This document shows, piece by piece, positions 33,073-49,681 of a stretch of 64,000 bases of DNA (its first letter is position 1; every line of letters starts with the position of its first letter). The translations under genes were made by a program, and so were the position numbers. The notes under the pieces are model-generated. The model saw only the letters and a program-made list of their open reading frames with translations, was not told where the DNA came from and searched no databases. Location of the stretch: IMG/VR virus record IMGVR_UViG_3300044712_000810, positions 1-64,000 of that record; one strand, written 5' to 3'.

Positions 33073-33963
33073 ATGCTTAATGATGGATTTTATAAAAAAG
33101 TTGAAGATCCAAAATATTTAAAAAACATACTTTACGGCGATACAGACTCTTTGTTCCTTTGTATCCCAACTAAAACATCAGCAAAACAAATGTCAATTGA
33201 CGAAATTATTAAAATTTCAAAAGATACTGGTAAGAATATAAATGATTTAATTCAACAGTATATGGTTAAATATTTGTTTCCAAAAGCAAATATTGATCCT
33301 AATTTTAATAAGACTCAATTTAAAAACGAAATGATTATGTCGAGTATCATGTTCCTCGACGTTAAAAAACAGTATGCATATAAACTACTAGTAAAAGAAG
33401 GTGTTGTACTAACAGAACCTGAAACCAAATATACCGGTATTCAGATTGTTAGAACCAATACTGCAAAAATTACTAGTAAACTTTTAAGAGAAATGATTGA
33501 GGATGTTATTCTTAATCCACAAATTACAAGAAAACAACGTATTCCAAAACTTATTGAACTCGTTGATGCAAAACACAAAGTATTTAATGATTTTGCAGAC
33601 GCATGTGATTTTACCGAAATAGGTATTCCATGTAAATGGCAAAAACAAGATCAACATATTATGGGAATGAAATTATATAATTTCATAATGGAGAAAGAGA
33701 CATTTAACTTAGGATCTTCCGGAAGATTCATCTATTGCAAATTTCATGATACTAGAACATTAAATCTTTCCGGTATAGATACTGATAAATTAAACGGTAT
33801 AGTCGTACCATATTCATATGATAAAGATAAACTTCGTGATGCAATGGCTAAATATAAAATCATCATCGATAGACAAACACAATGGGACACACTGTACTCC
33901 AAGACTTGTCAACGCTTAACTGAACTAGTAAAACTGATCGATAAGAGATCAGAAGGGAAGTAA
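33073..33963 (+). CDS. Family-B DNA polymerase, C-terminal part (palm motif C + thumb)
   Basis: ILYGDTDSLF, KKQYAY, KYTGIQIVRTNT. Confidence 0.9.
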   Translation: MLNDGFYKKVEDPKYLKNILYGDTDSLFLCIPTKTSAKQMSIDEIIKISKDTGKNINDLIQQYMVKYLFPKANIDPNFNKTQFKNEMIMSSIMFLDVKKQYAYKLLVKEGVVLTEPETKYTGIQIVRTNTAKITSKLLREMIEDVILNPQITRKQRIPKLIELVDAKHKVFNDFADACDFTEIGIPCKWQKQDQHIMGMKLYNFIMEKETFNLGSSGRFIYCKFHDTRTLNLSGIDTDKLNGIVVPYSYDKDKLRDAMAKYKIIIDRQTQWDTLYSKTCQRLTELVKLIDKRSEGK

Positions 33964-37174: not shown

Positions 37175-37221
37175 CACAAGAATGGGGGTGGAAACACCCC
37201 CATTTTTAATATTCTCTTTTT

Positions 37222-37359: not shown

Positions 37360-38982
37360 ATGAAGAAAGTCGTAAAATCAGTGGAAAAGGCAATTTACAA
37401 AAACCCAACAGCGACAGCAGACACTGTCAACAAACACGGCACAAAAGCTTGGACTCAGTCCGATAGCACTCGTGTCGATCAGATCATGATGACAGGTACA
37501 TTTGGAAACTCGTTCTACGCCTCCGGCGACGAACTTGTGAAAGATGCTATCGAAGTCATCGAACGCGTGGCAAAGAAAGATCCTGCGCTGCTTGCATCAA
37601 CCATCGTGAAGGGTCGTAATGACGGCTTCATCAGAACTGCACCGTTAATCGGTCTAACAGTTCTATCGATGCACGCTCCAGCTGAATTTCGTAAAATCTT
37701 CAACGATACCGTGAAAACCGGTAACGACCTTGAAGACTTCATGAAGTTCGCATCAACCATGCGTAAAGGATTCGGAACTGCAATCAAGAAAGCTATGTGG
37801 GGATGGCTGTTTGAAAAGGTAACACCTTTCTACGCAACCAAATACACAAAGCAAATCGCGAACGCAATTTCCGTTTCGCATCCAAGAACACTCGATCCTA
37901 TCTTCGATTACATCATGCAGCACACTGCTGGTAAATCGAGAAACTATGCGGCTGCTCTCAAAAAGTATCCTGCCCTTCGTGGTATGGAAGAAGCAAAGGT
38001 AGCAGTTCAAAACAAAGACTGGAAGAAAGCCCAGAAACTAATCGACGAGCACAGACTCGATCCGACTACTTTTCTTGGCATGGGAACAATGACAAAAGAT
38101 GTGTGGAAATCACTTTCTGCACAATTTGGTGTCATGGCATATCTCAAATACCTTAACAAGATCGTCCGCGAGGATGCTCTTGATCCTAAGGTAATGAGAG
38201 AAAAGCTAAAACCTGAAGTCCTGAACAAGGCAAAGGTTTTCCCATTCCGTCTTTACATCGCAAGAGAAAACATCCAGAACGCAACAGTTCGTGATCATCT
38301 CGCCCAAGTCCTCGACGACTACGGCAAGATTTACAACTGGGAATCTTGGGGTGACAAGCAATTTGTCATCGCACCAGACGTTTCTGGATCAATGGTTCAA
38401 GCTGTACGTGGATCTAAACTAACTCCAGCCACAGTTGCTGGTATGTTCAGTGGATTCCTGTACAAATTCATTCCAGGAAGTATTCTTCTTCCTTGGAGCA
38501 CTGAAGTTCGTCCGAACCTCGTGCGTCCTCGTCAGGACTCTGTTCTGACACATATCGAAAGTATTGCCCGTGCAAACGGCGGTGGAACAGCAATGGCTTC
38601 ACCGATCGATCACATGATCCGCAATAAGATCAAGTGTGACTACTTCATCGGAATCACCGATTCTGAAGAATGGTCTGCACCTGTGACCAGATATGCTTGG
38701 GGCGGACGTAGATCCGATGAAAGACAGTGGATTGATGCTTGGACTGAATACAGAAATAAAGTCAACAAGAATGCGAAAGCAATTCTTCTTCGTGTGGATG
38801 GATACCCAACACAGCCATTCGATGACAAAACAGCTAAAGAAAATGGAATTTACCAGATCTTCGGTTGGTCCGACAACGTACTCAAATACGTTGATTACGT
38901 GATCAATTCTGAAAAATATGTGGTAAAAGAAAAAGAAAAGAAAGTTGAAAAACTTGATAAATATGTAACTATCGAAAGATAG
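37360..38982 (+). CDS. Ro60/Rsr ortholog (TROVE + C-terminal vWA)
   Basis: TGTFGNSFYA, RNDGFIRTAP, FPFRLYIA, vWA MIDAS-like APDVSGSM, GGGTAMASP, ITDSEEW. Confidence 0.9.
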   Translation: MKKVVKSVEKAIYKNPTATADTVNKHGTKAWTQSDSTRVDQIMMTGTFGNSFYASGDELVKDAIEVIERVAKKDPALLASTIVKGRNDGFIRTAPLIGLTVLSMHAPAEFRKIFNDTVKTGNDLEDFMKFASTMRKGFGTAIKKAMWGWLFEKVTPFYATKYTKQIANAISVSHPRTLDPIFDYIMQHTAGKSRNYAAALKKYPALRGMEEAKVAVQNKDWKKAQKLIDEHRLDPTTFLGMGTMTKDVWKSLSAQFGVMAYLKYLNKIVREDALDPKVMREKLKPEVLNKAKVFPFRLYIARENIQNATVRDHLAQVLDDYGKIYNWESWGDKQFVIAPDVSGSMVQAVRGSKLTPATVAGMFSGFLYKFIPGSILLPWSTEVRPNLVRPRQDSVLTHIESIARANGGGTAMASPIDHMIRNKIKCDYFIGITDSEEWSAPVTRYAWGGRRSDERQWIDAWTEYRNKVNKNAKAILLRVDGYPTQPFDDKTAKENGIYQIFGWSDNVLKYVDYVINSEKYVVKEKEKKVEKLDKYVTIER

Positions 38983-39031
38983 TTTTCAGGTGGGAGTTAT
39001 TACACTCCCACCAACTACAAATTTCTAAATT

Positions 39032-39100
39032 TGCAAGGTATCAGTAATAAGTTTCAACGCACTGTTAAAGCCAAAAAGGCTTATTACATTAGTCCTTGCG
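39032..39100 (+). ncRNA. Scaffold RNA unit 1 (Asn GUU anticodon-loop cargo)
   Basis: GCAAGG/CCTTGC closing stem; GTAATAAGTTT/AGGCTTATTAC inner stem; CAAC-GC-A-CTGTTAA-A-GC. Confidence 0.8.
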
Positions 39101-39115
39101 CTTCTTTCAAATTTT

Positions 39116-39338
39116 GGAAGGTATCAGAAAAACGTTCAACGCACATGAAATGCACCCGAGTTAACACTCGTGTAGGTTCGAGTCCTACCCTTGGCACCAA
39201 TCATGGGGACCATCTAGAGAGAAAGTCGAAAGACCGCTTCAAAAGATAGCAATTAAATTTGCAGGTACCCTCCAAATTTTGCCGAGGTGGCGGAATTGGT
39301 AGACGCAGGTAAAAACAATGTTTTTCATCAGTCCTTCC
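39116..39338 (+). ncRNA. Scaffold RNA unit 2 enclosing a circularly permuted tRNA-Leu-like body
   Basis: GGAAGG/CCTTCC; 3' half 39154-39199 (variable arm, T arm, CCTTGGC-A-CCA) precedes 5' half 39281-39310 (GCCGAGGTGGCGGAATTGGTAGACGCA). Confidence 0.85.
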
Positions 39339-39347
39339 GACTTATTT

Positions 39348-39425
39348 TGTGGAGTAGAGTAGTCTGGTCTAACTCGTAGGTCTCATAAGCCTAGTACACA
39401 GGTTCAAATCCTGTCTCCGCAACCA
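39348..39425 (+). tRNA. tRNA-Met(CAT), initiator-like sequence
   Basis: TGTGGAG/CTCCGCA, D stem GAGT/ACTC, TAGGT-CTCATAA-GCCTA, ACAGG-TTCAAAT-CCTGT, ACCA end. Confidence 0.9.
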
Positions 39426-39429
39426 CTTT

Positions 39430-39523
39430 TGAAAGGTAATCCGACAAGATTCAACGTTACCATTATACGTCTATCGGGCAACTCGACGCCCGATCGAAAC
39501 CGTCTTGTCATCTAGTCCTTTCA
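39430..39523 (+). ncRNA. Scaffold RNA unit 3
   Basis: TGAAAGG/CCTTTCA; GACAAGAT/GTCTTGTC; TTCAACG; insert hairpin ATCGGGC/GCCCGAT. Confidence 0.8.
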
Positions 39524-39529
39524 CCCTTT

Positions 39530-39592
39530 TGCAAGGTAAATGAATCTGGATTCAACGGAAAACTGAAAACACCAGATTTAACAGTCCTTGCA
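39530..39592 (+). ncRNA. Scaffold RNA unit 4 (minimal; possible Phe GAA loop CTGAAAA)
   Basis: TGCAAGG/CCTTGCA; AATCTGG/CCAGATT; TTCAACG. Confidence 0.8.
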
Positions 39593-39612
39593 CTTAAAAT
39601 TTCTCACAACTT

Positions 39613-39757
39613 TTGAGAGGTAACCCCGAGTAGGTTCAACGCTATATGGAAGCCGGTGTCATCGGTTCGAATCCGATCTCCTCCATCACAAATCTTTTGG
39701 GGGAGTAGCTCAGTCTGGTAGAGCACGAAAAACAATCTGCTCAATTAGTCCTCTCAA
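39613..39757 (+). ncRNA. Scaffold RNA unit 5 enclosing a circularly permuted tRNA-Ala-like body
   Basis: TTGAGAGG/CCTCTCAA; T arm ATCGG-TTCGAAT-CCGAT and CTCCTCC-A (39661-39685) precede GGGGGAGTAGCTCAGTCTGGTAGAGCAC (from 39699); G3:U70. Confidence 0.85.
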
Positions 39758-39771
39758 CTTTTAAAAATTTT

Positions 39772-39846
39772 GGTCTAGTAGCTTAATGGTAGAGCACCTG
39801 CCTGTCGAGCAGCAAGATGTCGGTTCAAATCCGATCTAGATCGCCA
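39772..39846 (+). tRNA. tRNA-Asp(GTC), atypical anticodon arm
   Basis: GGTCTAG/CTAGATC, loop CTGTCGA, GTCGG-TTCAAAT-CCGAT, G73 and CCA. Confidence 0.85.
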
Positions 39847-39851
39847 TCTTT

Positions 39852-39970
39852 TGCAAGGTAACCCCGTGTGGTTTCAACGGAAACTAACAAGTCATCAAAA
39901 CTGGTTACAGTAGGATTCGAAGCCTACAACACCTTCGGGTGAAACGAGCCACACAAACCATGTCCTTGCA
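39852..39970 (+). ncRNA. Scaffold RNA unit 6 (T-arm-like and UUCG hairpins)
   Basis: TGCAAGG/CCTTGCA; GTGTGGTTT/GAGCCACAC; GTAGG-ATTCGAAG-CCTAC; CACC-TTCG-GGTG. Confidence 0.8.
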
Positions 39971-39981
39971 CTTAAAATTTT

Positions 39982-40067
39982 GGGGATGTTACACAAGCGG
40001 CAACGTGACCTGGCTGTAACCCAGGTGCCTTCGGGCTTCAGAGGTTCGAGTCCTCTCTTCCCCACCA
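39982..40067 (+). tRNA. tRNA-Tyr(GTA)
   Basis: GGGGATG/CTTCCCC, CCTGG-CTGTAAC-CCAGG, long variable arm, AGAGG-TTCGAGT-CCTCT, ACCA. Confidence 0.92.
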
Positions 40068-40085
40068 TTATAATTTGGAGATATT

Positions 40086-40481
40086 ATGTTTGATTTCAAT
40101 AAATGCGACAATCCAAAAAAGCAAGGTAATATTGGAATTGGTATCGCAATCGCATGGTTCGTAAAAAATGGTTGTACCGTATCTATTCCATTAACAGATT
40201 GTCAAGAATATGATCTTGTCATCGATGATATTAATGGAAAATTATACAAAGTTCAAGTTAAAACTACAACATTTAAAGAATTTAATACTTATAAAATTAA
40301 CTTAAAAACCTGTGGTGGCAATCAAAGTTTTAATACAATTAAAAAATTCGATAAAACGAAAGTAGATTTATTATTCATTGTTACCTGTGAAGGTGATATG
40401 TATTTAATTCCAACAAATAAAATAACACAAACAAATTGTTTAAAACTTGGTGAAAAATATCAAGACTGTAAAGTTACTTAA
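40086..40481 (+). CDS. Free-standing PD-(D/E)XK endonuclease (I-Ssp6803I/PDDEXK_5-like)
   Basis: KQGNIG...VSIPL.D...YDLVID...LYKVQVKT...KVDLLFI. Confidence 0.8.
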   Translation: MFDFNKCDNPKKQGNIGIGIAIAWFVKNGCTVSIPLTDCQEYDLVIDDINGKLYKVQVKTTTFKEFNTYKINLKTCGGNQSFNTIKKFDKTKVDLLFIVTCEGDMYLIPTNKITQTNCLKLGEKYQDCKVT

Positions 40482-40494
40482 AATTTCCACTTAT

Positions 40495-40577
40495 TTGAAG
40501 GGTAAACCGACAAGTTTCAACGCTCATAACGTATTCGCGCCATCTTGCGAATCTAACTTGTCACGCAGTCCCTTCAA
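40495..40577 (+). ncRNA. Scaffold RNA unit 7 (Met CAU anticodon-loop cargo)
   Basis: TTGAAGGG/CCCTTCAA; GACAAGTT/AACTTGTC; CAAC-G-CTCATAA-C. Confidence 0.8.
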
Positions 40578-40583
40578 CTTTTT

Positions 40584-40654
40584 TGTGAGGTATCAGTAAT
40601 AAGTTTCAACGCCCCTTGCACGAGCCTAAAACGCTTATTACACAAGTCCTCACA
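40584..40654 (+). ncRNA. Scaffold RNA unit 8 (Ala UGC anticodon-loop cargo)
   Basis: TGTGAGG/CCTCACA; same inner stem as unit 1; GCCC-CTTGCAC-GAGC. Confidence 0.8.
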
Positions 40655-40671
40655 TTTAAATTTCCAAATTT

Positions 40672-40805
40672 TGGAAGGTATCAAGAAACATCCAACGTTA
40701 ACTCCAAACCGGGGGTTATGGTTCAAGTCCATACATTTTGCCAAATAAGGCAGTGTAATGTAATGTAGCATACCGGTTCAACGCAGTTTCTTAAAAGTCC
40801 TTCCA
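40672..40805 (+). ncRNA. Scaffold RNA unit 9 enclosing a permuted tRNA-Trp-like body
   Basis: TGGAAGG/CCTTCCA; CTCCAAA-CCGG, T arm TATGG-TTCAAGT-CCATA, closed acceptor hairpin, then D arm ATGT/GCAT and CCGGT. Confidence 0.75.
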
Positions 40806-40812
40806 CATTTTT

Positions 40813-40880
40813 TGCGAGGTATTCTTCCAGGATTCAACGATCCTCTAAATCGAAAACGACCCTGGATATCAGTCCTCGCG
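40813..40880 (+). ncRNA. Scaffold RNA unit 10 (CGAT-CCTCTAA-ATCG stem-loop, Arg UCU-like)
   Basis: TGCGAGG/CCTCGCG; TCCAGG/CCTGGA; TTCAACG. Confidence 0.8.
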
Positions 40881-40900
40881 ACTTTTTTAAGGAGAACCAC

Positions 40901-41077
40901 ATGTGTAAAGATGAATGCACTTGCGAAGTCAAGTGTCCAATCTGTCAAGAATTGATAGATAAACATGGTGGATTATATCCAAACCAAGAAACAATCAAAG
41001 CCATCGAAGAAGTTCGAAACGGCAAAACAAAAACATTTAATTCAGTTGAAGAGTTATTTAACGAATTACACAAATAA
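40901..41077 (+). CDS. 58-aa protein: Cys-rich N-terminus plus DinJ/RelB-type C-terminal toxin-binding segment (not in ORF track)
   Basis: AAGGAG RBS; hand translation MCKDECTCEVKCPICQELIDKHGGLYPNQETIKAIEEVRNGKTKTFNSVEELFNELHK; followed by terminator CGGGTC-TTCG-GACCC. Confidence 0.75.
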   Translation: MCKDECTCEVKCPICQELIDKHGGLYPNQETIKAIEEVRNGKTKTFNSVEELFNELHK

Positions 41078-41114
41078 CCGGGTCTTCGGACCCAATTTTT
41101 ATTTTTACCTAAAG

Positions 41115-41645: not shown

Positions 41646-42173
41646 ATGAATTTCGTAATTGTATTAAACGCTAACTACGAAATACACCAGAAGGTTAGCG
41701 TAAAACAATGTCTAAGTATGATCAGGCGTCAAGTTGTTGAAGTTATTAAATACTCTGACAAAGTTATTACTACATGCAAAGAGAAGATTCAAATTCCTCT
41801 TATAGTACGTTTAATAACTGTAGTTAGAAAAGTATTTAAAAACAAGATACAATTCACAAAGAAAAACCTTTTTGTACGCGACCAATACATGTGTGCGTAC
41901 TGTGCCCAAAAATTCGAAAGTAAACAACTTTCGGTCGATCATATCCTTCCGGAATCGAGAGGAGGTCCGACTTCTTGGGAAAACTGTGTAACAGCCTGTG
42001 TCAAGTGTAACAACAAGAAAGACAACAAGACACCAAGAGAAGCCGGAATGTTTCTCAAATTCAAACCATTCGAACCAACCATAGCCGAATTCGTGAAACT
42101 AAAAGTAACACAAGACGGACTTGAAAAGTTTGTTAAAGAAATATTTGACCAACTTATGGACGAATGCAAATAA
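41646..42173 (+). CDS. HNH endonuclease (McrA-like)
   Basis: RDQYMCAYC...VDHILPESRGG...WENCVTACVKCNNKK. Confidence 0.92.
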   Translation: MNFVIVLNANYEIHQKVSVKQCLSMIRRQVVEVIKYSDKVITTCKEKIQIPLIVRLITVVRKVFKNKIQFTKKNLFVRDQYMCAYCAQKFESKQLSVDHILPESRGGPTSWENCVTACVKCNNKKDNKTPREAGMFLKFKPFEPTIAEFVKLKVTQDGLEKFVKEIFDQLMDECK

Positions 42174-42511: not shown

Positions 42512-42525
42512 ACTTGGAGTCAACC

Positions 42526-43629
42526 ATGTCGTGTCTGGATAAATGCGCATTTCTTATTCCATATACTCAAATAGAGGCAGGTGCACAAACACAATTGTGC
42601 AACTATTTAAAAGAACCATTTTGCCTCCGCGCAGCTGTAATGCCAGACATCCATACCGGATATGCGTTACCAGTTGGTGCGGTTGTATTGCTCGAAGGAG
42701 TAATATCACCAGCAGCAGTTGGTGTTGATATAGGTTGCGGAATGTGTTGTATTCGTACAGATGTTCCGATCAAACATATCAAAGGAAAAGAAGAAAAACT
42801 ATTTAAACAAATATATTCTACTATTCCAGTTGGATTTGGTAGTCATGCAAAAAAAAGAGACTATCCTGATTTCAAATCAGCAATACTGGATAAAAAACTG
42901 GATGCAGCAATAAATTTAAAATTAAAAGAACAACTTGGAACTCTCGGTGGTGGGAATCACTTTATTGAAATTGGTGAAACACGAGAAGGAAATATAGGAA
43001 TTACTATTCATAGTGGATCACGTAATGCTGGAAAGCAAATATGTGATCATTACTGTGCATTAGCTAAAAAAATTCATACTGAATTAAAAGGTGACTTTCT
43101 ATTCTTCGATCGTGATGAAGGAAAGGCATACTTTCAAGATATGAACTTTATGTTATCATATGCATTAGAAAATCGTTTAAATATGATGGTTGACATTCTT
43201 GATATACTTGGGTTGGATCAAAATCTACTCAAGGAAATCATTAATGAGAATCATAATCATGCCGAAGATCTAGATGGAAAGATTCTGCATCGTAAAGGTG
43301 CAACACCAGCAGCAAAAGACCAATTGGGTGTTATCCCAGGTAATATGCGCGACGGTGTATATATAACTAAAGGTCTTGGCAACGACAAATATCTGTCAAG
43401 TGCAAGTCATGGAGCCGGTCGTAAAGGTTCTAGAACTTGGGCAAAACAAAAAGATACAGTCGAAACATTTGCAAAACTAATGAATGGTATTGTCGCGAAA
43501 GTTGACAAACATACATTGGATGAAGCACCTTGGGCATATAAAAAGATCGAGGATGTAATTAAAGCACAAGAAGGAATTGTGGTTGATATTATCGATCACA
43601 TTAGACCAATCATTAACATCAAAGGATAG
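42526..43629 (+). CDS. rtcB: RtcB 2',3'-cyclic-phosphate/5'-OH RNA ligase
   Basis: MPDIHTG, VGVDIGCG, LGTLGGGNHFIE, IHSGSR, NENHNH, HRKGATP, SASHGAGR, DEAPWAYK. Confidence 0.95.
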   Translation: MSCLDKCAFLIPYTQIEAGAQTQLCNYLKEPFCLRAAVMPDIHTGYALPVGAVVLLEGVISPAAVGVDIGCGMCCIRTDVPIKHIKGKEEKLFKQIYSTIPVGFGSHAKKRDYPDFKSAILDKKLDAAINLKLKEQLGTLGGGNHFIEIGETREGNIGITIHSGSRNAGKQICDHYCALAKKIHTELKGDFLFFDRDEGKAYFQDMNFMLSYALENRLNMMVDILDILGLDQNLLKEIINENHNHAEDLDGKILHRKGATPAAKDQLGVIPGNMRDGVYITKGLGNDKYLSSASHGAGRKGSRTWAKQKDTVETFAKLMNGIVAKVDKHTLDEAPWAYKKIEDVIKAQEGIVVDIIDHIRPIINIKG

Positions 43630-43950: not shown

Positions 43951-45204
43951 ATGAAGAAACTATCGAAATCTAAATTGAAAAATAGGGCATCAAGATTGAA
44001 AGCAGTAGTAGGCAGTCCAATGTCTATTGATATGGAATATTATGAGGACACTGTAAAATATCAAGGAGACAAAATGGATCAGGGCGAAGATCTGAATGTT
44101 GGTCTTACGTTTGGCGCTGACTTCGGTTATCCTGTTTATGGCGTTGTTGCCAAAGGTAAAACTGAAGAACTTCTGCGTCATGCAAACAAGACCGGTCTTT
44201 CCGAACACGAAGAATTCAACATGGTCATTGATGGAAAGAAACGTAGTGACGTATTTGAGATTTTTCGCAAATATGGTCGTTGCATGGACTTCCAAAAAAG
44301 AACTTTCGTCTGTATGGCGGAAGATGCTTACATCGGTGTTAACTTCACCGATCGTGATTCCTATAGTGGAATCTATGTTTCCTTTGACGGAAACGATAAA
44401 AACAAATTGATTGAACTTCGCAATCAAATTTATGCAGAACTTAAAGAATTTAAAAAAGTGTGCATTAACTGTGAAGTCAATTGGTATTATGCCAAAGGAT
44501 GCAATCAAGAACTTCAGTCTCAACAGATTCAGGAAGTTCTTGATGATAATGTTTATCCCGAAGCATATCCTTATATTGAAAATCTTGATGAATTCATCAA
44601 TGATTATCTTGCCGGTGATGAACAAGTTCTCATCTTCCTGGGTCCTCCCGGAACCGGTAAAACTCGTTTGATCCGCTACATTCTTAATCGTATGGTCGTC
44701 AAACAAATTGAAAAACAAGGAGTAGGTCTTAGCCGTTATGGCGATGCCTATTTCGAAGATGACGATGATGTAAATATCATGTATACTACCGATGCGAAAG
44801 TATTGGAACATGAAGAGTTCATTGTGGATTTCCTTACCAATAGGCACTCCGCAATGGTTCTTGAAGATATTGACTTTAACCTTCGTCCTCGCATGGATAA
44901 CAACACTTCCATGTATAAACTTCTTGCCTCCAGTGATGGTCTTCTGACCAACCGTGGACGTAAGATGATTATTAGTACCAACGTTGATAGCGTTGCGAAA
45001 ATCGACGAAGCTCTTATTCGTCCCGGACGTTGCTACGGCATCGTTCAATTCCAGAAACTTAATCCCGAACAGGCAAATACGTTTCTGAAAGTTATTGGCA
45101 GTGACGAAACTGTTACTGTTGAAAAAACCATTGCCGAACTTTACGCTATGAAGAAACATACTCGTAGCGGTTCTGGCAACAATATTCGCAAAATCGGATT
45201 CTAG
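43951..45204 (+). CDS. AAA+ ATPase
   Basis: GPPGTGKT, VLEDID, STN, IDEALIRPGRC. Confidence 0.9.
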   Translation: MKKLSKSKLKNRASRLKAVVGSPMSIDMEYYEDTVKYQGDKMDQGEDLNVGLTFGADFGYPVYGVVAKGKTEELLRHANKTGLSEHEEFNMVIDGKKRSDVFEIFRKYGRCMDFQKRTFVCMAEDAYIGVNFTDRDSYSGIYVSFDGNDKNKLIELRNQIYAELKEFKKVCINCEVNWYYAKGCNQELQSQQIQEVLDDNVYPEAYPYIENLDEFINDYLAGDEQVLIFLGPPGTGKTRLIRYILNRMVVKQIEKQGVGLSRYGDAYFEDDDDVNIMYTTDAKVLEHEEFIVDFLTNRHSAMVLEDIDFNLRPRMDNNTSMYKLLASSDGLLTNRGRKMIISTNVDSVAKIDEALIRPGRCYGIVQFQKLNPEQANTFLKVIGSDETVTVEKTIAELYAMKKHTRSGSGNNIRKIGF

Positions 45205-45284: not shown

Positions 45285-45497
45285 ATGAGAACAATAACCA
45301 TGGAAAATGGAAGCATGTACTATGATGAAGAATTTAATTCACTAATCATAGCCAAAAATCTTGAAAATGGCAATGTTTCCGTTTTTACACCATGTACAGA
45401 CTGGGATATAACGTTTAGGTTAGGGCGTCCACAATTTTTTACAACTGTAATAACACGAGAACAATTTAACACGTACATTAGCATGGAGGACTCATGA
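45285..45497 (+). CDS. Hypothetical protein
   Basis: GAGGAGG RBS; ATGA overlap with the vWA gene. Confidence 0.65.
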   Translation: MRTITMENGSMYYDEEFNSLIIAKNLENGNVSVFTPCTDWDITFRLGRPQFFTTVITREQFNTYISMEDS

Positions 45498-46903
45498 CAG
45501 CAAGAGACTGGATTGACGTTTGCATCTCGTTTGACACAACAGGAAGCATGTATCCCTGCCTGGGCGAAGTTCGCTCCAAGATCACCAAAATGGTGGACAC
45601 CCTGTTTTCGAAGATCCCGAATCTTCGTATCGCAATCATCGCTCATGGCGACTACTGCGATGCAGGCCGTCCTTACACCGTTAAGGTGATGGATTTCACC
45701 AACGAAAAGAACACCATCGTCAACTTCGTGAACAAGGTCGAACCGACCGGCGGCGGTGATGCACCTGAATGCTACGAACTGGTTCTCAAAACTGCGAGAA
45801 CTCTTCTCTCGTGGCGTTCCGGCACCTCCAAGTCCATCGTCATGATTGGCGACGACAATCCGCACGGACCTACCTATCCGCAGAACGTCGACAAGATCGA
45901 CTGGCAGAACGAATGCGGCCTGCTGAAAGAAGCCAACGTCAAGGTCTATGGCATTCATGCCATGCCTGGTTGCCGTCGTCACAGCGAAACCTTTTACAGG
46001 GCAATCGCTGCAAGAACCGAAGGCACCTATCTGACCCTGGACCAGTTCGCAGCGATCGAACAGCTCATTCTCGGCATCTGCTACAAACAGGACAGCGTCG
46101 AGAAACTCAACGAATACGTCGAAGTCATCAAGGTCGGTGCCGGTCGTAGCACCCTGCGTAACATCGCAGCACTCACCGGAACCACCTTCGACGAGGCCGA
46201 CTATTCAAAGAAGCACATGCCCAAGGGCCTCGTGCCGGTTCCTTCCGGCCGCTTCCAGGTCTTCACCGTTCCATCGAAGATGGCAATCAAACAGTTCGTC
46301 GTCGATCGCGGAATCCTTTTCAAGAAGGGCCGTGGCTTCTACGAGCTCACCAAGTCCGAAACCGTCCAGCAGTACAAAGAAGTCATTCTGCAGGACAAGA
46401 TCACTGGCGAATTCTACGCCGGTGCTGCCGCTCGCGAAATGCTCGGCCTGCGCCCGCAGATCGAAGGAACTTCTGGTGGCATCCACGAGAAGCTTCGTCC
46501 TGTCGATCTGGACAAATACCGCGTGTTCATCCAGAGCACCTCGGTAAACCGCGCTCTCGTCGCCGGATCTGGCTTCCTTTACGAAGTCGAAGACTGGGAC
46601 AAGAAGGGAGAGACTCTCGAAGTCAAGGAAACCATTCCTGTCGTGGTCGGAAAAACTGCCAAAGCAACCGCCAAGGCTCCGACCAAGGCGACCACCAAGA
46701 CCCCTGCCAAGGCCCCGGCCAAAAGCAGAACGAAACCCACCGTGGTTCACGCCAAGATCACCGGCTTCGTGGTCAAGATCGAAGACGACGGCAAGATCAA
46801 CATCGCAAACGCCTCCGGCGAAAAGCCTTTCATGACCATCGCCGCCGAACACAACTTGGCATCCGCTCTGCGCAAGATCGCAGAAGTCGGAGAATTCAAG
46901 TAA
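45494..46903 (+). CDS. von Willebrand factor A domain protein with Lys/Ala/Thr-rich linker
   Basis: SFDTTGSM MIDAS, TGGGDAPECYE, MIGDDNPH; GC-rich codons. Confidence 0.85.
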   Translation: MTARDWIDVCISFDTTGSMYPCLGEVRSKITKMVDTLFSKIPNLRIAIIAHGDYCDAGRPYTVKVMDFTNEKNTIVNFVNKVEPTGGGDAPECYELVLKTARTLLSWRSGTSKSIVMIGDDNPHGPTYPQNVDKIDWQNECGLLKEANVKVYGIHAMPGCRRHSETFYRAIAARTEGTYLTLDQFAAIEQLILGICYKQDSVEKLNEYVEVIKVGAGRSTLRNIAALTGTTFDEADYSKKHMPKGLVPVPSGRFQVFTVPSKMAIKQFVVDRGILFKKGRGFYELTKSETVQQYKEVILQDKITGEFYAGAAAREMLGLRPQIEGTSGGIHEKLRPVDLDKYRVFIQSTSVNRALVAGSGFLYEVEDWDKKGETLEVKETIPVVVGKTAKATAKAPTKATTKTPAKAPAKSRTKPTVVHAKITGFVVKIEDDGKINIANASGEKPFMTIAAEHNLASALRKIAEVGEFK

Positions 46904-47468: not shown

Positions 47469-47578
47469 CAAAAATTAAAGTGGGGGATGGCTTACGTCCC
47501 CCACGCAATTTGATTTCCCTTCTAAAGTTATAAAGAAATAGTTTTATAGTATAAAATCCTTGGGAATTGGGGGTAAGA

Positions 47579-49681
47579 GTGCAACAAATCCAATGTGACG
47601 ATTTAATTGACATGATTAAGTCCGACAAAATTTCTCCCTATCAATTTTATTCTACGGATATTGATTATCCACAGTATTACAGTGTTGAATATTTTTTAAA
47701 TCATCCTCATGATACTATTGAAAAAAATCAAAAGCTTAAAATCCTGTTTTTAGACATCGAAGTTTATATGCAAGGATCTACGAAATTCCCAAAACCAGAA
47801 GAAGGGGAATTTCCAGTAAGCGCAATTACAACATATTTAAATACAAAAAACAAGTTTACATCTTATTTTTTATTATTGAATAAAAACATACAAAAATTTC
47901 CAGTAGAAGATCTTGAAAAACAAAAACAAGATTATTTAAACACACTGTTACAAAATAAATATATAACAGACAAAGATACACTGGAAATTAAAATTTTTAC
48001 GAATGAAACAGAACTGTTAAAAACATTTTGGGAAGATGTAAAAACAGATGATCCAGCATGTTTAACAGGATGGAACAGCGATCAATTCGACTTACCGTAT
48101 CTATATTACAGAACGGTTAATGTATTAAATGGTGATGAAAAACGTGCTCATAAGTTAATGTCTAAATTTGGACAAGTTAAAGTTAGAGCATATGGTGGAA
48201 AAATAGTAATAGATTTTCCAGAATTTATTAATATGGATTTATATTACTTATATAAACCACGAGCAGAAGGTGGACTTGCACAAGGTAAAACTATGGCAAG
48301 TTATTCACTAGATTTCGTGTCAGAACAAATTTTAAAATTAAAGAAATTAGAATATAAAAATGAAGGTATGAGTCTGGATATGTTTTATGAAGCAGATCCA
48401 GTTGGATACTTATTATATAACATAATGGACTGTTGCCTAGTTAATTTACTTAACAATAAACTAGGACACCCAGACCGATATAACATGTTACGTCGTCTTA
48501 TGAAGACACCATTAGGTATTGCACTAAGAGGTCCTTCCGCATTATTTGATACATTCGTTTTACATGAATTGACAAGAAATGGTCAGGGCCCAAGATTTGG
48601 AATACTAGACGAAACAAGTGTAGAAATTCCAGAACATGAGATTAGACAAATACCTACACAAAAAACAAGTAAGAAAATTAAATGGGGAATTACTGAAATT
48701 TCCCAAGAAACTTATAGAGCGATAACTTGTAGATATCCTGGCGCATATGTTAAGGATTCTCCAGGTTTAATTTATGACTTGGATGATGGAATTCTAATTG
48801 ACTTAGATGCAACATCACTGTATCCAAGTATGATCTGTCAATATAATATCAGTTTCGATACATTCCATGGAAGAGTAATTGATCCTATTGTAACTAAATC
48901 ATTAGTAACAATTGATAATATTATTAAATCAAATGGACCAATTGCAGATAATATCTATATTGGTCTTTGTGACATGGCATCAAAATATGTATATAGAGAA
49001 GAATTTACAAATAAAAACGATTATACACAACAAGTGTATTATATCACATGTTATCTTATTAAGAAAATAAAAGAACATGGAAAAGAACTTGATAAGTTAT
49101 TTCATCCAAAAGACTATAAAGATTATATCGTACTTAAACGTTACTTGTTACCACTTATTGACTTACTTGAAGACTTATCATCAAACTCTGAAGAATATAA
49201 TACATTCGCCCATGACTATTTATTAATGGACAAAACTGATCCAGAAGTAAAAAGTTTATTAATAGTTGAAAATATAACGAAACCAACAATATGTGTTAAT
49301 CGTATTTTGGTCGAAGATTTTCCAAATTATCTAAAACAACAAAAACTAGTATTTACTCTAACCGGATGTTTATTCAATGAACACAATGACAAAATAAGTA
49401 TCTTTTATGAATTCCTTACAAACATGAAAAATATGCGCGATCAATATAAAAGAGATCGCGACAGTAATGAAGAAGGAAGCGAAAAGTATCGTTATTTTGA
49501 CATGATGCAGAATGCCACCAAAGTAACAATGAACTCAACATATGGTCTATATGGCATGAGTTTATTCAGATATAGTAATAAATGGTTGGCGAAAACTATT
49601 ACAATTTCCGGAAGATTAACACTAAAACTAGCACAAAGATTATCTGATGTATATATAAGTTCTCTCAAGGAAAATAATTAA
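47579..49681 (+). CDS. Family-B DNA polymerase, N-terminal part (3'-5' exonuclease, motifs A and B)
   Basis: FLDIEV (ExoI), GWNSDQFDLPYL (ExoII), YNIMD (ExoIII), DLDATSLYPS, KVTMNSTYG; lacks YGDTDS. Confidence 0.9.
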   Translation: MQQIQCDDLIDMIKSDKISPYQFYSTDIDYPQYYSVEYFLNHPHDTIEKNQKLKILFLDIEVYMQGSTKFPKPEEGEFPVSAITTYLNTKNKFTSYFLLLNKNIQKFPVEDLEKQKQDYLNTLLQNKYITDKDTLEIKIFTNETELLKTFWEDVKTDDPACLTGWNSDQFDLPYLYYRTVNVLNGDEKRAHKLMSKFGQVKVRAYGGKIVIDFPEFINMDLYYLYKPRAEGGLAQGKTMASYSLDFVSEQILKLKKLEYKNEGMSLDMFYEADPVGYLLYNIMDCCLVNLLNNKLGHPDRYNMLRRLMKTPLGIALRGPSALFDTFVLHELTRNGQGPRFGILDETSVEIPEHEIRQIPTQKTSKKIKWGITEISQETYRAITCRYPGAYVKDSPGLIYDLDDGILIDLDATSLYPSMICQYNISFDTFHGRVIDPIVTKSLVTIDNIIKSNGPIADNIYIGLCDMASKYVYREEFTNKNDYTQQVYYITCYLIKKIKEHGKELDKLFHPKDYKDYIVLKRYLLPLIDLLEDLSSNSEEYNTFAHDYLLMDKTDPEVKSLLIVENITKPTICVNRILVEDFPNYLKQQKLVFTLTGCLFNEHNDKISIFYEFLTNMKNMRDQYKRDRDSNEEGSEKYRYFDMMQNATKVTMNSTYGLYGMSLFRYSNKWLAKTITISGRLTLKLAQRLSDVYISSLKENN

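What the first reader, a model, noticed from the sequence alone, without database searches (positions are those of the whole stretch)
39032..40880. Array of ten covarying ncRNA scaffolds directly downstream of Ro60: a candidate new multi-copy Y-RNA-like family
Seen: ten units of ~60-225 nt separated by U-rich spacers. Each has a closing helix, UA, a short internal loop, a second helix ending in (U)U, CAAC(G), a variable insert, an A-rich run, the helix-2 partner and then (A/U)GU-CC. The closing helices covary: GCAAGG/CCTTGC, GGAAGG/CCTTCC, GAAAGG/CCTTTC, GAGAGG/CCTCTC, GAAGGG/CCCTTC, GTGAGG/CCTCAC, GCGAGG/CCTCGC. Helix 2 differs between units yet always pairs. UUCAACG resembles a T-loop module. 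Known: Ro60 binds a helix joining the 5' and 3' ends of Y RNAs, which tether or gate effectors. The YrlA GNCGAAG signature is absent from these stems. Inference: a constant Ro-binding handle with ten interchangeable cargo domains, which I do not recognise as a described family.
Basis: partly seen in the sequence, partly recalled or inferred. Interest (0 to 1): 0.95.

Follow-up and report, generated by a model that had tools for sequence, protein, structure and literature searches.

The report
Ro60-linked Y-RNA-like array, new handle
Just downstream of a jumbo phage's Ro60 gene lie ten small structured RNAs that share an invariant stem-loop "handle" but carry different inserts; the same RNA family, absent from Rfam, sits beside related Ro60 genes in dozens of metagenomic phage and bacterial loci, so it is most likely a new branch of the known Y RNAs that partner Ro60.

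Summary
Ten units lie on the + strand between 39033 and 40879. Each has a 6-7 bp closing helix (P1), an internal loop starting with U-A, a second helix (P2), then UUCAACG, a variable cargo of 17-184 nt, and AGU before the P1 3' strand. Unit 9 is aberrant. Three true tRNAs and one endonuclease ORF are interleaved.

A covariance model built from the units finds nothing else in the 64 kb. It finds 120 further copies in 45 of 54 loci that encode a related Ro60, all on the Ro60 strand. Most lie within 20-250 nt of the gene, in arrays of 1-10.

All 15 modelled base pairs show compensatory changes. UUCAAC and five loop nucleotides are invariant in 122 distinct sequences.

Rfam has no model for the family. 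Only unit 5 gives a sub-threshold YrlA match (36 bits against a cut-off of 69). Units 2 and 5, and about a fifth of the relatives, carry a permuted tRNA-like domain, which is the YrlA architecture. RtcB and RtcA are syntenic, as in rsr-yrlBA-rtcBA operons. Canonical YrlA occurs only beside distant Ro60 clades.

Verdict: a divergent, multi-copy Y-RNA subfamily, a new variant of a known kind. Ro60 binding is inferred, not shown.

The parts
37178..37207 (+). Intrinsic-terminator-like hairpin with T run that closes the upstream transcription unit
37360..38982 (+). Ro60 ortholog (540 aa; TROVE ring plus vWA domain)
   Evidence: Pfam vWA_Ro60 at 50 bits and TROVE at 28 bits; the clade profile matches PDB Ro60 chains at E 1e-39
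38989..39012 (+). 8-bp hairpin just after the Ro60 stop codon, with no T tract; possibly a processing or stabilising element
   Evidence: read directly from the sequence
39033..39099 (+). Unit 1: handle plus short cargo (67 nt)
   Evidence: 80.5 bits; z -3.9
39116..39338 (+). Unit 2: handle plus a permuted class-II (Leu-like) tRNA-like domain. Order is long variable arm, T arm, acceptor 3' strand, A73 and encoded CCA (about 39158-39199), an 85-nt linker, then acceptor 5' strand and D arm (about 39284-39310).
39348..39425 (+). tRNA-Met (CAU), interleaved in the array
39431..39522 (+). Unit 3: handle plus hairpin cargo (92 nt)
   Evidence: 39.2 bits; z -4.8
39531..39591 (+). Unit 4: minimal unit (61 nt), handle with only a 22-nt loop
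   Evidence: 74.1 bits; z -5.8
39615..39755 (+). Unit 5: handle plus a permuted tRNA-like domain (T arm, 7-bp acceptor with G3.U70 and A73, 14-nt closing loop, D arm). This is the YrlA-type unit.
   Evidence: Rfam YrlA 36.2 bits (cut-off 69), E 1e-5, full model length
39772..39846 (+). tRNA-Asp (GUC), interleaved in the array
39853..39969 (+). Unit 6: handle plus three-hairpin cargo (117 nt)
39982..40067 (+). tRNA-Tyr (GUA), interleaved in the array
40086..40481 (+). PD-(D/E)XK_5 endonuclease ORF splitting the array; likely a mobile or homing endonuclease
   Evidence: Pfam PF11645 at 65.6 bits
40497..40575 (+). Unit 7: handle plus hairpin cargo (79 nt)
40585..40653 (+). Unit 8: handle plus short cargo (69 nt). 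Its P2 is identical to unit 1, but its P1 differs with compensatory changes.
   Evidence: 82.1 bits
40673..40804 (+). Unit 9: aberrant or composite unit. P1 and P2 are intact, the 5' UUCAAC has degenerated to CCAACG, there is an internal T-arm-like hairpin and a degenerate 3' end near 40730, and a second UUCAACG lies at 40776-40782.
   Evidence: (D18)
40814..40879 (+). Unit 10: handle plus short cargo (66 nt)
   Evidence: 76.7 bits
40901..41077 (+). 58-aa ORF with an N-terminal Cys-rich part and a weak RelB-like C-terminus; last gene before the terminator
   Evidence: Pfam RelB at 21.1 bits, below its cut-off
41080..41093 (+). Intrinsic-terminator-like hairpin with T run that closes the Ro60-array unit
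42514..43629 (+). RtcB RNA ligase, syntenic partner of Ro60 here and in 10 related loci
   Evidence: Pfam RtcB at 270.8 bits; clustering and Pfam of relatives

Best explanation
The region is an array of Y-RNA-like non-coding RNAs, the counterpart of bacterial YrlA/YrlB, belonging to the Ro60 gene immediately upstream.

Shown: Ro60, ten RNA units, three tRNAs and two small ORFs lie on one strand between two terminator-like hairpins. Every unit folds so that its 5' and 3' ends pair. The structure is P1, then an asymmetric internal loop with invariant U-R on one side and A-K-U on the other, then P2, then invariant UUCAAC, then a variable cargo. The same handle, with other helix sequences and other cargos, stands beside related Ro60 genes in many genomes.

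Inferred: the cluster is transcribed with or after Ro60 as a precursor and cut in the U-rich spacers, which have the same ...UUUUG leader as the tRNAs, into separate 60-225 nt RNAs. The invariant handle is the docking site for this clade's Ro60, playing the role of the GNCGAAG stem in YrlA. The cargo decides what each RNP contacts or mimics. Two cargos (U2, U5) are permuted tRNA-like domains. As shown for M. smegmatis YrlA, these could be cut by RNase P and given a CCA tail. With RtcB nearby, the likely biological role is RNA quality control or repair during infection: gating or tethering Ro60 to exonucleases or repair enzymes, or acting as tRNA decoys against tRNA-cleaving host defences.
For: Anatomy and chance level.

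Covariation: within the window, 11 of 15 pairs have compensatory changes. Across 41 sequences and across 122 distinct sequences, 15 of 15 pairs do, with 92-93% of cells paired against 43-51% in slid controls and 0 of 500 shuffles reaching the covariation score. G-U pairs occur only in the + sense.

Invariant unpaired nucleotides: U11, R12, UUCAAC, A, K and U are constant in 122 sequences.

Association with Ro60: 130 model hits, all on the Ro60 strand. 45 of 54 Ro60-clade loci have at least one hit, with the nearest typically 20-250 nt from the gene. There are no other hits in the 64-kb window. This meets the criterion used to define bacterial Y RNAs, namely within 4 kb and on the same strand (PMC4201824).

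The protein is a true Ro60.

Synteny: RtcB and RtcA accompany Ro60 as in rsr-yrlBA-rtcBA operons (PMC7790460).

YrlA architecture: it is present in U2, U5 and 26 of 122 relatives.

Partition by clade: the handle is found only next to Ro60s at least about 37% identical to this one, while canonical YrlA above its Rfam cut-off is found only next to Ro60s 23-27% identical.

Loop variant: the AGU or AUU variant is uniform among all paralogs of a locus (10/10, 9/9, 7/7). It needs a single change on the Ro60 protein tree, against a shuffled mean of 7.3, with 0 of 500 shuffles as low.

Transcription unit: terminator-like hairpins bracket Ro60 plus the array.
Against: No expression, end-mapping or binding data exist for any member. 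The association was measured mainly from Ro60 to the RNA. The reverse test, sequence-pattern scans of IMG/VR, found only one other viral contig with true members (440 kb; loci L070 and L162, at least 5 units). No Ro60 of this clade lies in the 17 kb fetched there, although tRNAs and Tpt1 do. The known Ro60-binding signature GNCGAAN0-1G is absent from the handles, so which part of the handle contacts Ro60, if any, is unknown. Tracking of the loop variant with the Ro60 tree could reflect simple linkage. About 9 of 54 related Ro60 loci had no hit, and three of these (L041, L043, L060) had more than 2 kb of upstream flank.
Confidence: 0.75

Rival explanations
1. The handle RNAs belong to the RNA-repair module but not to Ro60. 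They would be substrates, guides or decoys for another factor. P1 juxtaposes the 5' and 3' ends, which would suit end-joining or circularisation by RtcB, or recognition by RNase P, RNase Z or the CCA-adding enzyme as an acceptor-like 7-bp stem followed by U-R. Alternatively they could be decoys for host anticodon nucleases.
For: RtcB is syntenic in 11 loci and RtcA in 11. The Ro60-less 440-kb contig has units next to tRNAs and Tpt1/KptA. Units and tRNAs share the same UUUUG leader. Two cargos in that contig carry an anticodon-loop-like CUGAUAA. Hughes et al. proposed YrlA as a competitive inhibitor of an anticodon nuclease (PMC7790460).
Against: Ro60 is the only protein common to all loci, whereas RtcB and RtcA were seen in about a fifth, though short contigs limit that count. 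The handle type switches exactly where the Ro60 clade switches. In established systems the stem formed by the RNA ends is the Ro60 site (PMC4201824).
Confidence: 0.12
2. The units are cis-acting parts of the operon mRNA, such as tandem leader, attenuator or stability elements controlling Ro60/rtc expression, rather than free RNAs.
For: In most relatives the array lies between a promoter-like site and the Ro60 start codon, on the same strand.
Against: In the window, L017, L036, L007 and L018 the array is downstream of Ro60. Copy number varies from 1 to 10 and cargo from 17 to 214 nt. Cargos include complete tRNA-like domains with RNase-P-type leaders. In Salmonella and M. smegmatis such operon-embedded RNAs are processed to free Y RNAs (PMC4201824).
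Confidence: 0.06
3. The units are decayed tRNA-derived repeats or processing punctuation of a phage tRNA cluster, with no function of their own.
For: They are interleaved with three tRNAs and share leaders with them. Several cargos hold T-arm-like hairpins.
Against: Thirteen related loci holding arrays contained only one true tRNA. Eleven unpaired positions are invariant across 122 sequences from many genomes, and all helices covary, which implies selection on the fold itself. No unit matches the tRNA model.
Confidence: 0.04

Closest known systems
YrlA (Rfam RF02553; Chen et al. 2014, PMC4201824), the tRNA-like bacterial and phage Y RNA
   Same: It is encoded within 4 kb of Ro60 on the same strand, often in an operon with rtcB/rtcA. 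Its 5' and 3' ends pair into a stem. An A-rich 3' strand of the loop precedes the stem. U2, U5 and about a fifth of the relatives carry the same permuted tRNA-like domain (T arm, closed acceptor stem, D arm). Seven-bp acceptor stems with an RNase-P-type leader occur as in M. smegmatis YrlA.
   Different: There is no GNCGAAN0-1G motif. Instead UUCAAC is invariant at the P2/cargo junction, and an extra conserved closing helix P1 carries a U-R / A-K-U internal loop. The best Rfam score is 36 bits against a cut-off of 69. Eight of the ten units have no tRNA-like domain. There are up to ten copies per locus, against one or two tandem YrlA matches in the canonical loci scanned here. The family is tied to a separate Ro60 clade.
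YrlB, Yrn1 and Yrn2 (S. Typhimurium, M. smegmatis, D. radiodurans) and Yrl1/Yrl2 of Thermus phage phiLo (PMC12135203)
   Same: These are second, shorter Y RNAs encoded beside Ro60, with a terminal stem and a variable effector-side module. A phage-encoded Ro60 binding phage-encoded Y-like RNAs has been shown for phiLo.
   Different: Those RNAs carry the CGAA-type motif and occur as one or two genes. The window Ro60 is only about 22% identical to phiLo Ro60, and no handle hits occur in Mx1 or Streptomyces phage Ro60 loci.
Metazoan Y RNAs (RF00019)
   Same: They share the general logic: the ends pair to form the Ro60 site, and a variable loop or module recruits other factors.
   Different: There is no sequence or model similarity at E up to 10. 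Transcription and processing differ, and the conserved bulged-helix sequence differs.
Permuted tRNA genes and two-piece (permuted) tmRNA
   Same: U2 and U5 have the 3' half of a tRNA-like fold encoded upstream of the 5' half. U5 has G3.U70 with A73, like tRNA-Ala and tmRNA, and gives weak tmRNA_permuted and cyano_tmRNA matches.
   Different: There is no anticodon arm, no tag reading frame and no pseudoknots. The scores are below the cut-offs (28.8 against 47). The open end is closed by the Ro60-type handle, as in YrlA.

Membership tests
YrlA (RF02553) | Encoded within about 4 kb of a Ro60 ortholog on the same strand | tested here: met
   The array starts 51 nt after the Ro60 stop codon on the + strand. 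The same holds in 45 of 54 related loci.
YrlA (RF02553) | 5' and 3' ends pair into a stem that carries the Ro60 site | tested here: met
   P1 and P2 are formed by the two ends in all ten units and covary. Ro60 contact itself was not tested.
YrlA (RF02553) | GNCGAAN0-1G motif in the stem | tested here: not met
   There is no occurrence in any handle. The single hit at 39225 lies in the U2 linker, at background frequency (51 hits per 64 kb on the + strand).
YrlA (RF02553) | tRNA-like domain (T arm, acceptor stem, D arm) between the stem strands | tested here: inconclusive
   It is present in U2 and U5 and absent from the other eight units. At least one unit per locus has it in many relatives, as Chen et al. 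describe.
YrlA (RF02553) | Reaches the Rfam gathering score of 69 bits | tested here: not met
   The best score is 36.2 bits (U5). The other nine units have no match at E up to 10. Relatives reach 31-33 bits at best. Canonical loci score 70-84 bits.
Y RNA in the functional sense | Bound by Ro60 in vivo or in vitro | not testable with these tools
   This needs RIP, EMSA or a structure.
Metazoan Y RNA (RF00019) | Match to the family model, including the conserved bulged helix | tested here: not met
   There is no match at E up to 10 in 38900-41000.
tRNA (RF00005) | Cloverleaf in normal order with an anticodon arm | tested here: not met
   Only the three interleaved tRNAs match. The units do not.
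Permuted tmRNA (RF04321) | Gathering score of 47 bits, tag ORF and pseudoknots | tested here: not met
   The score is 28.8 bits, covering only the T arm and acceptor of U5. ARAGORN finds no tmRNA.
UUCAAC-handle RNA (family defined here, models R1 and R2) | P1 of 6-7 bp, then U-R, P2 of about 8 bp, invariant UUCAAC, cargo, P2', then A-K-U before P1' | tested here: met
   Nine of ten units meet every feature. U9 keeps P1, P2 and AGU but has CCAACG at the canonical site.

The most novel reading that the evidence does not exclude
The array is a library of adaptor RNAs in which one Ro60 docking handle presents up to ten different modules. At least two modules become split, CCA-ended tRNA mimics after RNase P cleavage. 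One has alanine identity elements (G3.U70, A73) and one is a leucine-like class-II fold with an encoded CCA. These could be aminoacylated, or could serve as bait for tRNA-targeting defence nucleases. On this reading a jumbo phage uses a programmable Ro60 RNP set to sense, shield or repair the tRNA pool. The extra P1 helix with acceptor-like geometry (7 bp followed by U-R) and the T-loop-like UUCAA would make the handle itself a tRNA-minihelix mimic handled by tRNA enzymes.
Probability: 0.15. Interest if true: 0.85.

Novelty: new variant of a known kind. Interest (0 to 1): 0.62.

Why it matters
Bacterial and phage Y RNAs are known almost entirely through the YrlA model. That model misses this whole Ro60 clade, which includes jumbo and other phage contigs as well as Lentisphaerae, Kiritimatiellae, Victivallaceae and Verrucomicrobia MAGs. 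A second handle with 11 invariant unpaired nucleotides gives a defined, mutable target for asking how Ro60 recognises its RNAs and how that recognition co-evolves. Arrays of up to ten units with different cargos give a natural test of the idea that Y RNAs act as modular tethers or gates. The model built here would also allow annotation of at least 120 currently unannotated RNA genes. The phage setting, with Ro60, Y-like RNAs, tRNAs and RtcB together, bears on how large phages protect or repair RNA during infection.

Tried and rejected
1. Megablast of 37360-41100 against GenBank phages found no match.
2. tblastn of Ro60 against phage records found only 21-26% identical proteins (Mx1, Streptomyces, Gordonia, phiLo). 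Their loci (L005, L006) have no handle hits.
3. An exact-consensus scan of IMG/VR with the window's handle found only the window's own contig. L003 and L004 are GC-rich chance matches without a closing helix.
4. Three scans with the relatives' consensus gave 31 loci, of which only L070 and L162, both from one 440-kb contig, hold true members.
5. Rfam at gathering and at E up to 10 gave nothing for nine units. The tmRNA_permuted, cyano_tmRNA, mir-2774 and sR28 matches were rejected as sub-threshold or partial.
6. The GNCGAAG signature is at chance level.
7. Sigma-70 promoter scan: the count equals the shuffle expectation, so there is no promoter call inside the window's array.
8. UUCAACG as a true T-loop cannot be tested by sequence. 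The base before UUCAA and the base that would close a T-loop are not conserved as a pair, so this stays a resemblance only.
9. I could not settle whether YrlA stem 1 corresponds to P1 or to P2. cmscan aligned it to P2 and the A-rich 3' loop supports that, but the GAGGUG of P1 in relatives loosely resembles GNCGAANG.
10. The ORF 39031-39249 (72 aa, TTG start) overlapping U1 and U2 was treated as spurious.
11. Two review papers (PMC10870794, PMC6047535) were not available.
Full report
**1. What is in the sequence**

The window is part of a 314,837-bp IMG/VR contig, a jumbo phage. ORF 37360-38982 encodes a 540-aa protein with Pfam vWA_Ro60 and a partial TROVE match. A profile of this protein and 27 relatives matches the solved structures of human and Xenopus Ro60, D. 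radiodurans Rsr and Thermus phage phiLo Ro60 over nearly its full length, with E values from 1e-39 to 5e-21. It is therefore a genuine but divergent Ro60, only 21-26% identical to Ro60s of cultured phages.

The array begins 51 nt after its stop codon. Reading the sequence gives ten units at 39033-39099, 39116-39338, 39431-39522, 39531-39591, 39615-39755, 39853-39969, 40497-40575, 40585-40653, 40673-40804 and 40814-40879.

Each unit has, in order:
- a U-rich leader ending in UUUUG;
- a closing helix P1 of 6 bp, or 7 with a U-R pair;
- U-A and 3-5 further unpaired bases;
- helix P2 of 6-11 bp;
- UUCAACG;
- a cargo;
- an A-rich run;
- the P2 partner;
- 3-4 bases followed by AGU;
- the P1 partner.

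Three real tRNAs (Met 39348-39425, Asp 39772-39846, Tyr 39982-40067) and a PD-(D/E)XK endonuclease ORF (40086-40481) are interleaved. The tRNAs, and the 5' halves of the tRNA-like domains inside U2 and U5, have the same AAAUUUUG-type leader as the units. Terminator-like hairpins at 37178-37207 and 41080-41093 bracket Ro60, the array and a 58-aa ORF.

**2. Is it more than chance?**

The pattern GGTA-N10-13-TTCAACG occurs nine times, all in the array and on the + strand, against 0.12 expected. Every unit's minimum-free-energy fold recovers P1 and P2 on its own, with z-scores from -2.4 to -5.8. A plain MAFFT alignment of six short units already shows compensatory changes in P1. A covariance model built from it (R1) finds nine of the ten units and nothing else in the 64 kb on either strand. 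On that alignment 11 of 15 pairs have compensatory changes.

U9 is the exception. Its P1 and P2 are intact, but the canonical UUCAAC reads CCAACG. There is an internal look-alike of a unit's 3' end near 40730 (repeat D18), and a displaced UUCAACG lies at 40776. It looks like a rearranged unit.

**3. Relatives elsewhere**

The Ro60 protein has 177 relatives at 35-48% identity in metagenomes. I fetched 54 distinct loci encoding them.

R1 gave 44 hits there, all on the Ro60 strand. A second model built from 41 window and foreign sequences (R2) gave 130 hits in the window plus these loci, again all on the Ro60 strand. Forty-five of 54 loci have at least one unit. The nearest is usually 20-250 nt from the gene. 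Arrays range from 1 to about 10 copies: L048 has 9-10 upstream of Ro60 behind a promoter-like site, L036 has 7-8 downstream, and L008 has 7-8.

On 122 distinct sequences all 15 modelled pairs show compensatory changes. 92.3% of cells are paired, against 43-50% when the partner is slid by 1-3 columns, and no shuffle reaches the covariation score. The alignment is model-fitted, which favours the structure. The slid controls, the independent MFE folds and the MAFFT result argue that the signal is real.

The unpaired positions are more striking. U and R after P1, UUCAAC after P2, and A, K (G or U) and U before the P1 3' strand are invariant or nearly so in all 122 sequences, while helix sequences and cargo (17-214 nt) vary freely.

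**4. Relation to known Y RNAs**

Rfam 15 gives no match at gathering thresholds. At E up to 10 only U5 matches YrlA over the whole model, at 36.2 bits against a cut-off of 69. Relatives give at most 31-33 bits.

The match arises because the U5 cargo is a permuted tRNA-like domain: T arm, 7-bp acceptor stem closed by a 14-nt loop, then D arm. This is exactly the YrlA architecture described by Chen et al. (PMC4201824). U2 holds a second such domain of class-II (Leu-like) type, with an encoded CCA and an 85-nt linker. Twenty-six of 122 family members have a canonical T arm in the cargo, and at least ten also have a D arm after it.

RtcB lies 3.5 kb downstream in the window and next to Ro60 in ten other loci. 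An RtcA fragment family occurs in eleven loci. This reproduces the rsr-yrlBA-rtcBA arrangement of Salmonella (PMC7790460).

The YrlA signature GNCGAAN0-1G is absent from the handles.

Among 80 Ro60 loci from reference genomes, handle hits occur only beside Ro60s at least about 37% identical to the window's, from Lentisphaerae, Kiritimatiellae and Verrucomicrobia MAGs, plus one weak hit in a Herpetosiphonaceae MAG. Canonical YrlA above its cut-off, at 70-84 bits and sometimes two in tandem, occurs beside the distant Ro60s at 23-27% identity in Cardiobacterium, Rhodobacteraceae, Budvicia, Phytobacter, Adhaeretor and Chitinimonas. The two RNA types therefore partition with the protein clade.

Within the clade, the loop variant before P1' (AGU or AUU) is identical in all paralogs of a locus. 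It needs one change on the Ro60 tree, against 7.3 for shuffled labels.

**5. Most likely mechanism**

Shown: the anatomy, the conservation, the covariation, the strand and distance relation to Ro60, the synteny with RtcB/RtcA, and the YrlA-type cargos.

Inferred:
- The units are cut out of a Ro60-array precursor at the U-rich spacers.
- The invariant handle is the docking site of this clade's Ro60.
- The cargos give each RNP a different partner or mimicry.
[quoted passage not shown], U2 and U5 should be cut into two base-paired pieces with a tRNA-like CCA end. U5 carries G3.U70 and A73, the alanine identity set (established tRNA knowledge; the base pair is read).
- The biological role is probably RNA surveillance or repair during infection, as proposed generally for TROVE proteins in jumbo phages (PMC7824862). 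YrlA has also been proposed as a possible nuclease decoy (PMC7790460).

**6. Weak points**

There are no expression or binding data. The association was measured starting from Ro60. In the reverse direction, pattern scans of IMG/VR recovered only one other viral contig with true units (440 kb; L070 and L162, at least five units). The 17 kb fetched there holds tRNAs, HNH genes and Tpt1/KptA but no Ro60 of this clade. Which of P1-loop or UUCAAC contacts Ro60 is unknown, and the correspondence of P1 and P2 to the YrlA stems could not be fixed. The rival explanations are a partner other than Ro60, a cis-acting leader, and tRNA-derived debris; I rate them at 0.12, 0.06 and 0.04.

**7. Verdict**

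It is best described as a divergent, multi-copy subfamily of YrlA/YrlB-type Y RNAs with a new conserved handle. The family is widespread beside one Ro60 clade in phages and PVC-group bacteria and is absent from Rfam. It is a new variant of a known kind, not a categorically new system.

Noticed in passing
window 33073-33963 and 47567-49681: Family-B DNA polymerase is encoded in two separate ORFs 14 kb apart and in swapped order. The ORF matching Pfam DNA_pol_B positions 218-345 lies upstream of the ORF holding the exonuclease domain and DNA_pol_B positions 102-198.
   Followed up: no
window 43951-45204 and 45494-46903: An AAA ATPase and a vWA-domain protein form a pair directly downstream of RtcB. 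They may belong to the same RNA-repair neighbourhood.
   Followed up: no
window 41646-42173 and 40086-40481: An HNH endonuclease lies just upstream of RtcB, and a PD-(D/E)XK endonuclease sits inside the RNA array. Mobile endonucleases are clustered in this RNA region.
   Followed up: no
window 38989-39012: An 8-bp GC-rich hairpin lies immediately after the Ro60 stop codon, with no T tract. It may be a processing or stability element between the Ro60 mRNA and the RNA array.
   Followed up: no
window 39200-39283: The 85-nt linker inside the acceptor 'loop' of U2 folds into its own branched structure and contains GUCGAAAG, a literal match to GNCGAAN0-1G, at background frequency.
   Followed up: partly
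L008 3756-3826: An Rfam int-alpA RNA match (48.6 bits, above the 35.8 cut-off) lies directly downstream of a related Ro60 gene in a phage-like contig.
   Followed up: no
L070 410-498 and 2023-2173; L162 3060-3448: A 440-kb IMG/VR contig carries at least five handle units behind promoter-like TTGAAA/TTGACT...TATATT sites, near tRNAs and Tpt1/KptA, with no Ro60 in the 17 kb fetched. Two cargos contain an anticodon-loop-like CUGAUAA, and ARAGORN calls tRNA-Ile(GAU) inside the units.
   Followed up: partly
L094 1513-1642, 2442-2563; L095 2466-2597, 2751-2858: In Herpetosiphon-type Ro60 loci, 108-132-nt sequences upstream of Ro60 match the tRNA model end to end with large insertions. They may be a third kind of Ro60-linked tRNA-like RNA.
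   Followed up: no
L010/L017 downstream of Ro60: In a close relative (121-kb contig) the Ro60 array is followed by an Rnl-type RNA ligase and an NAD-synthase/tRNA-methyltransferase-like gene instead of RtcB, which suggests different repair enzymes paired with the same RNA family.
   Followed up: no
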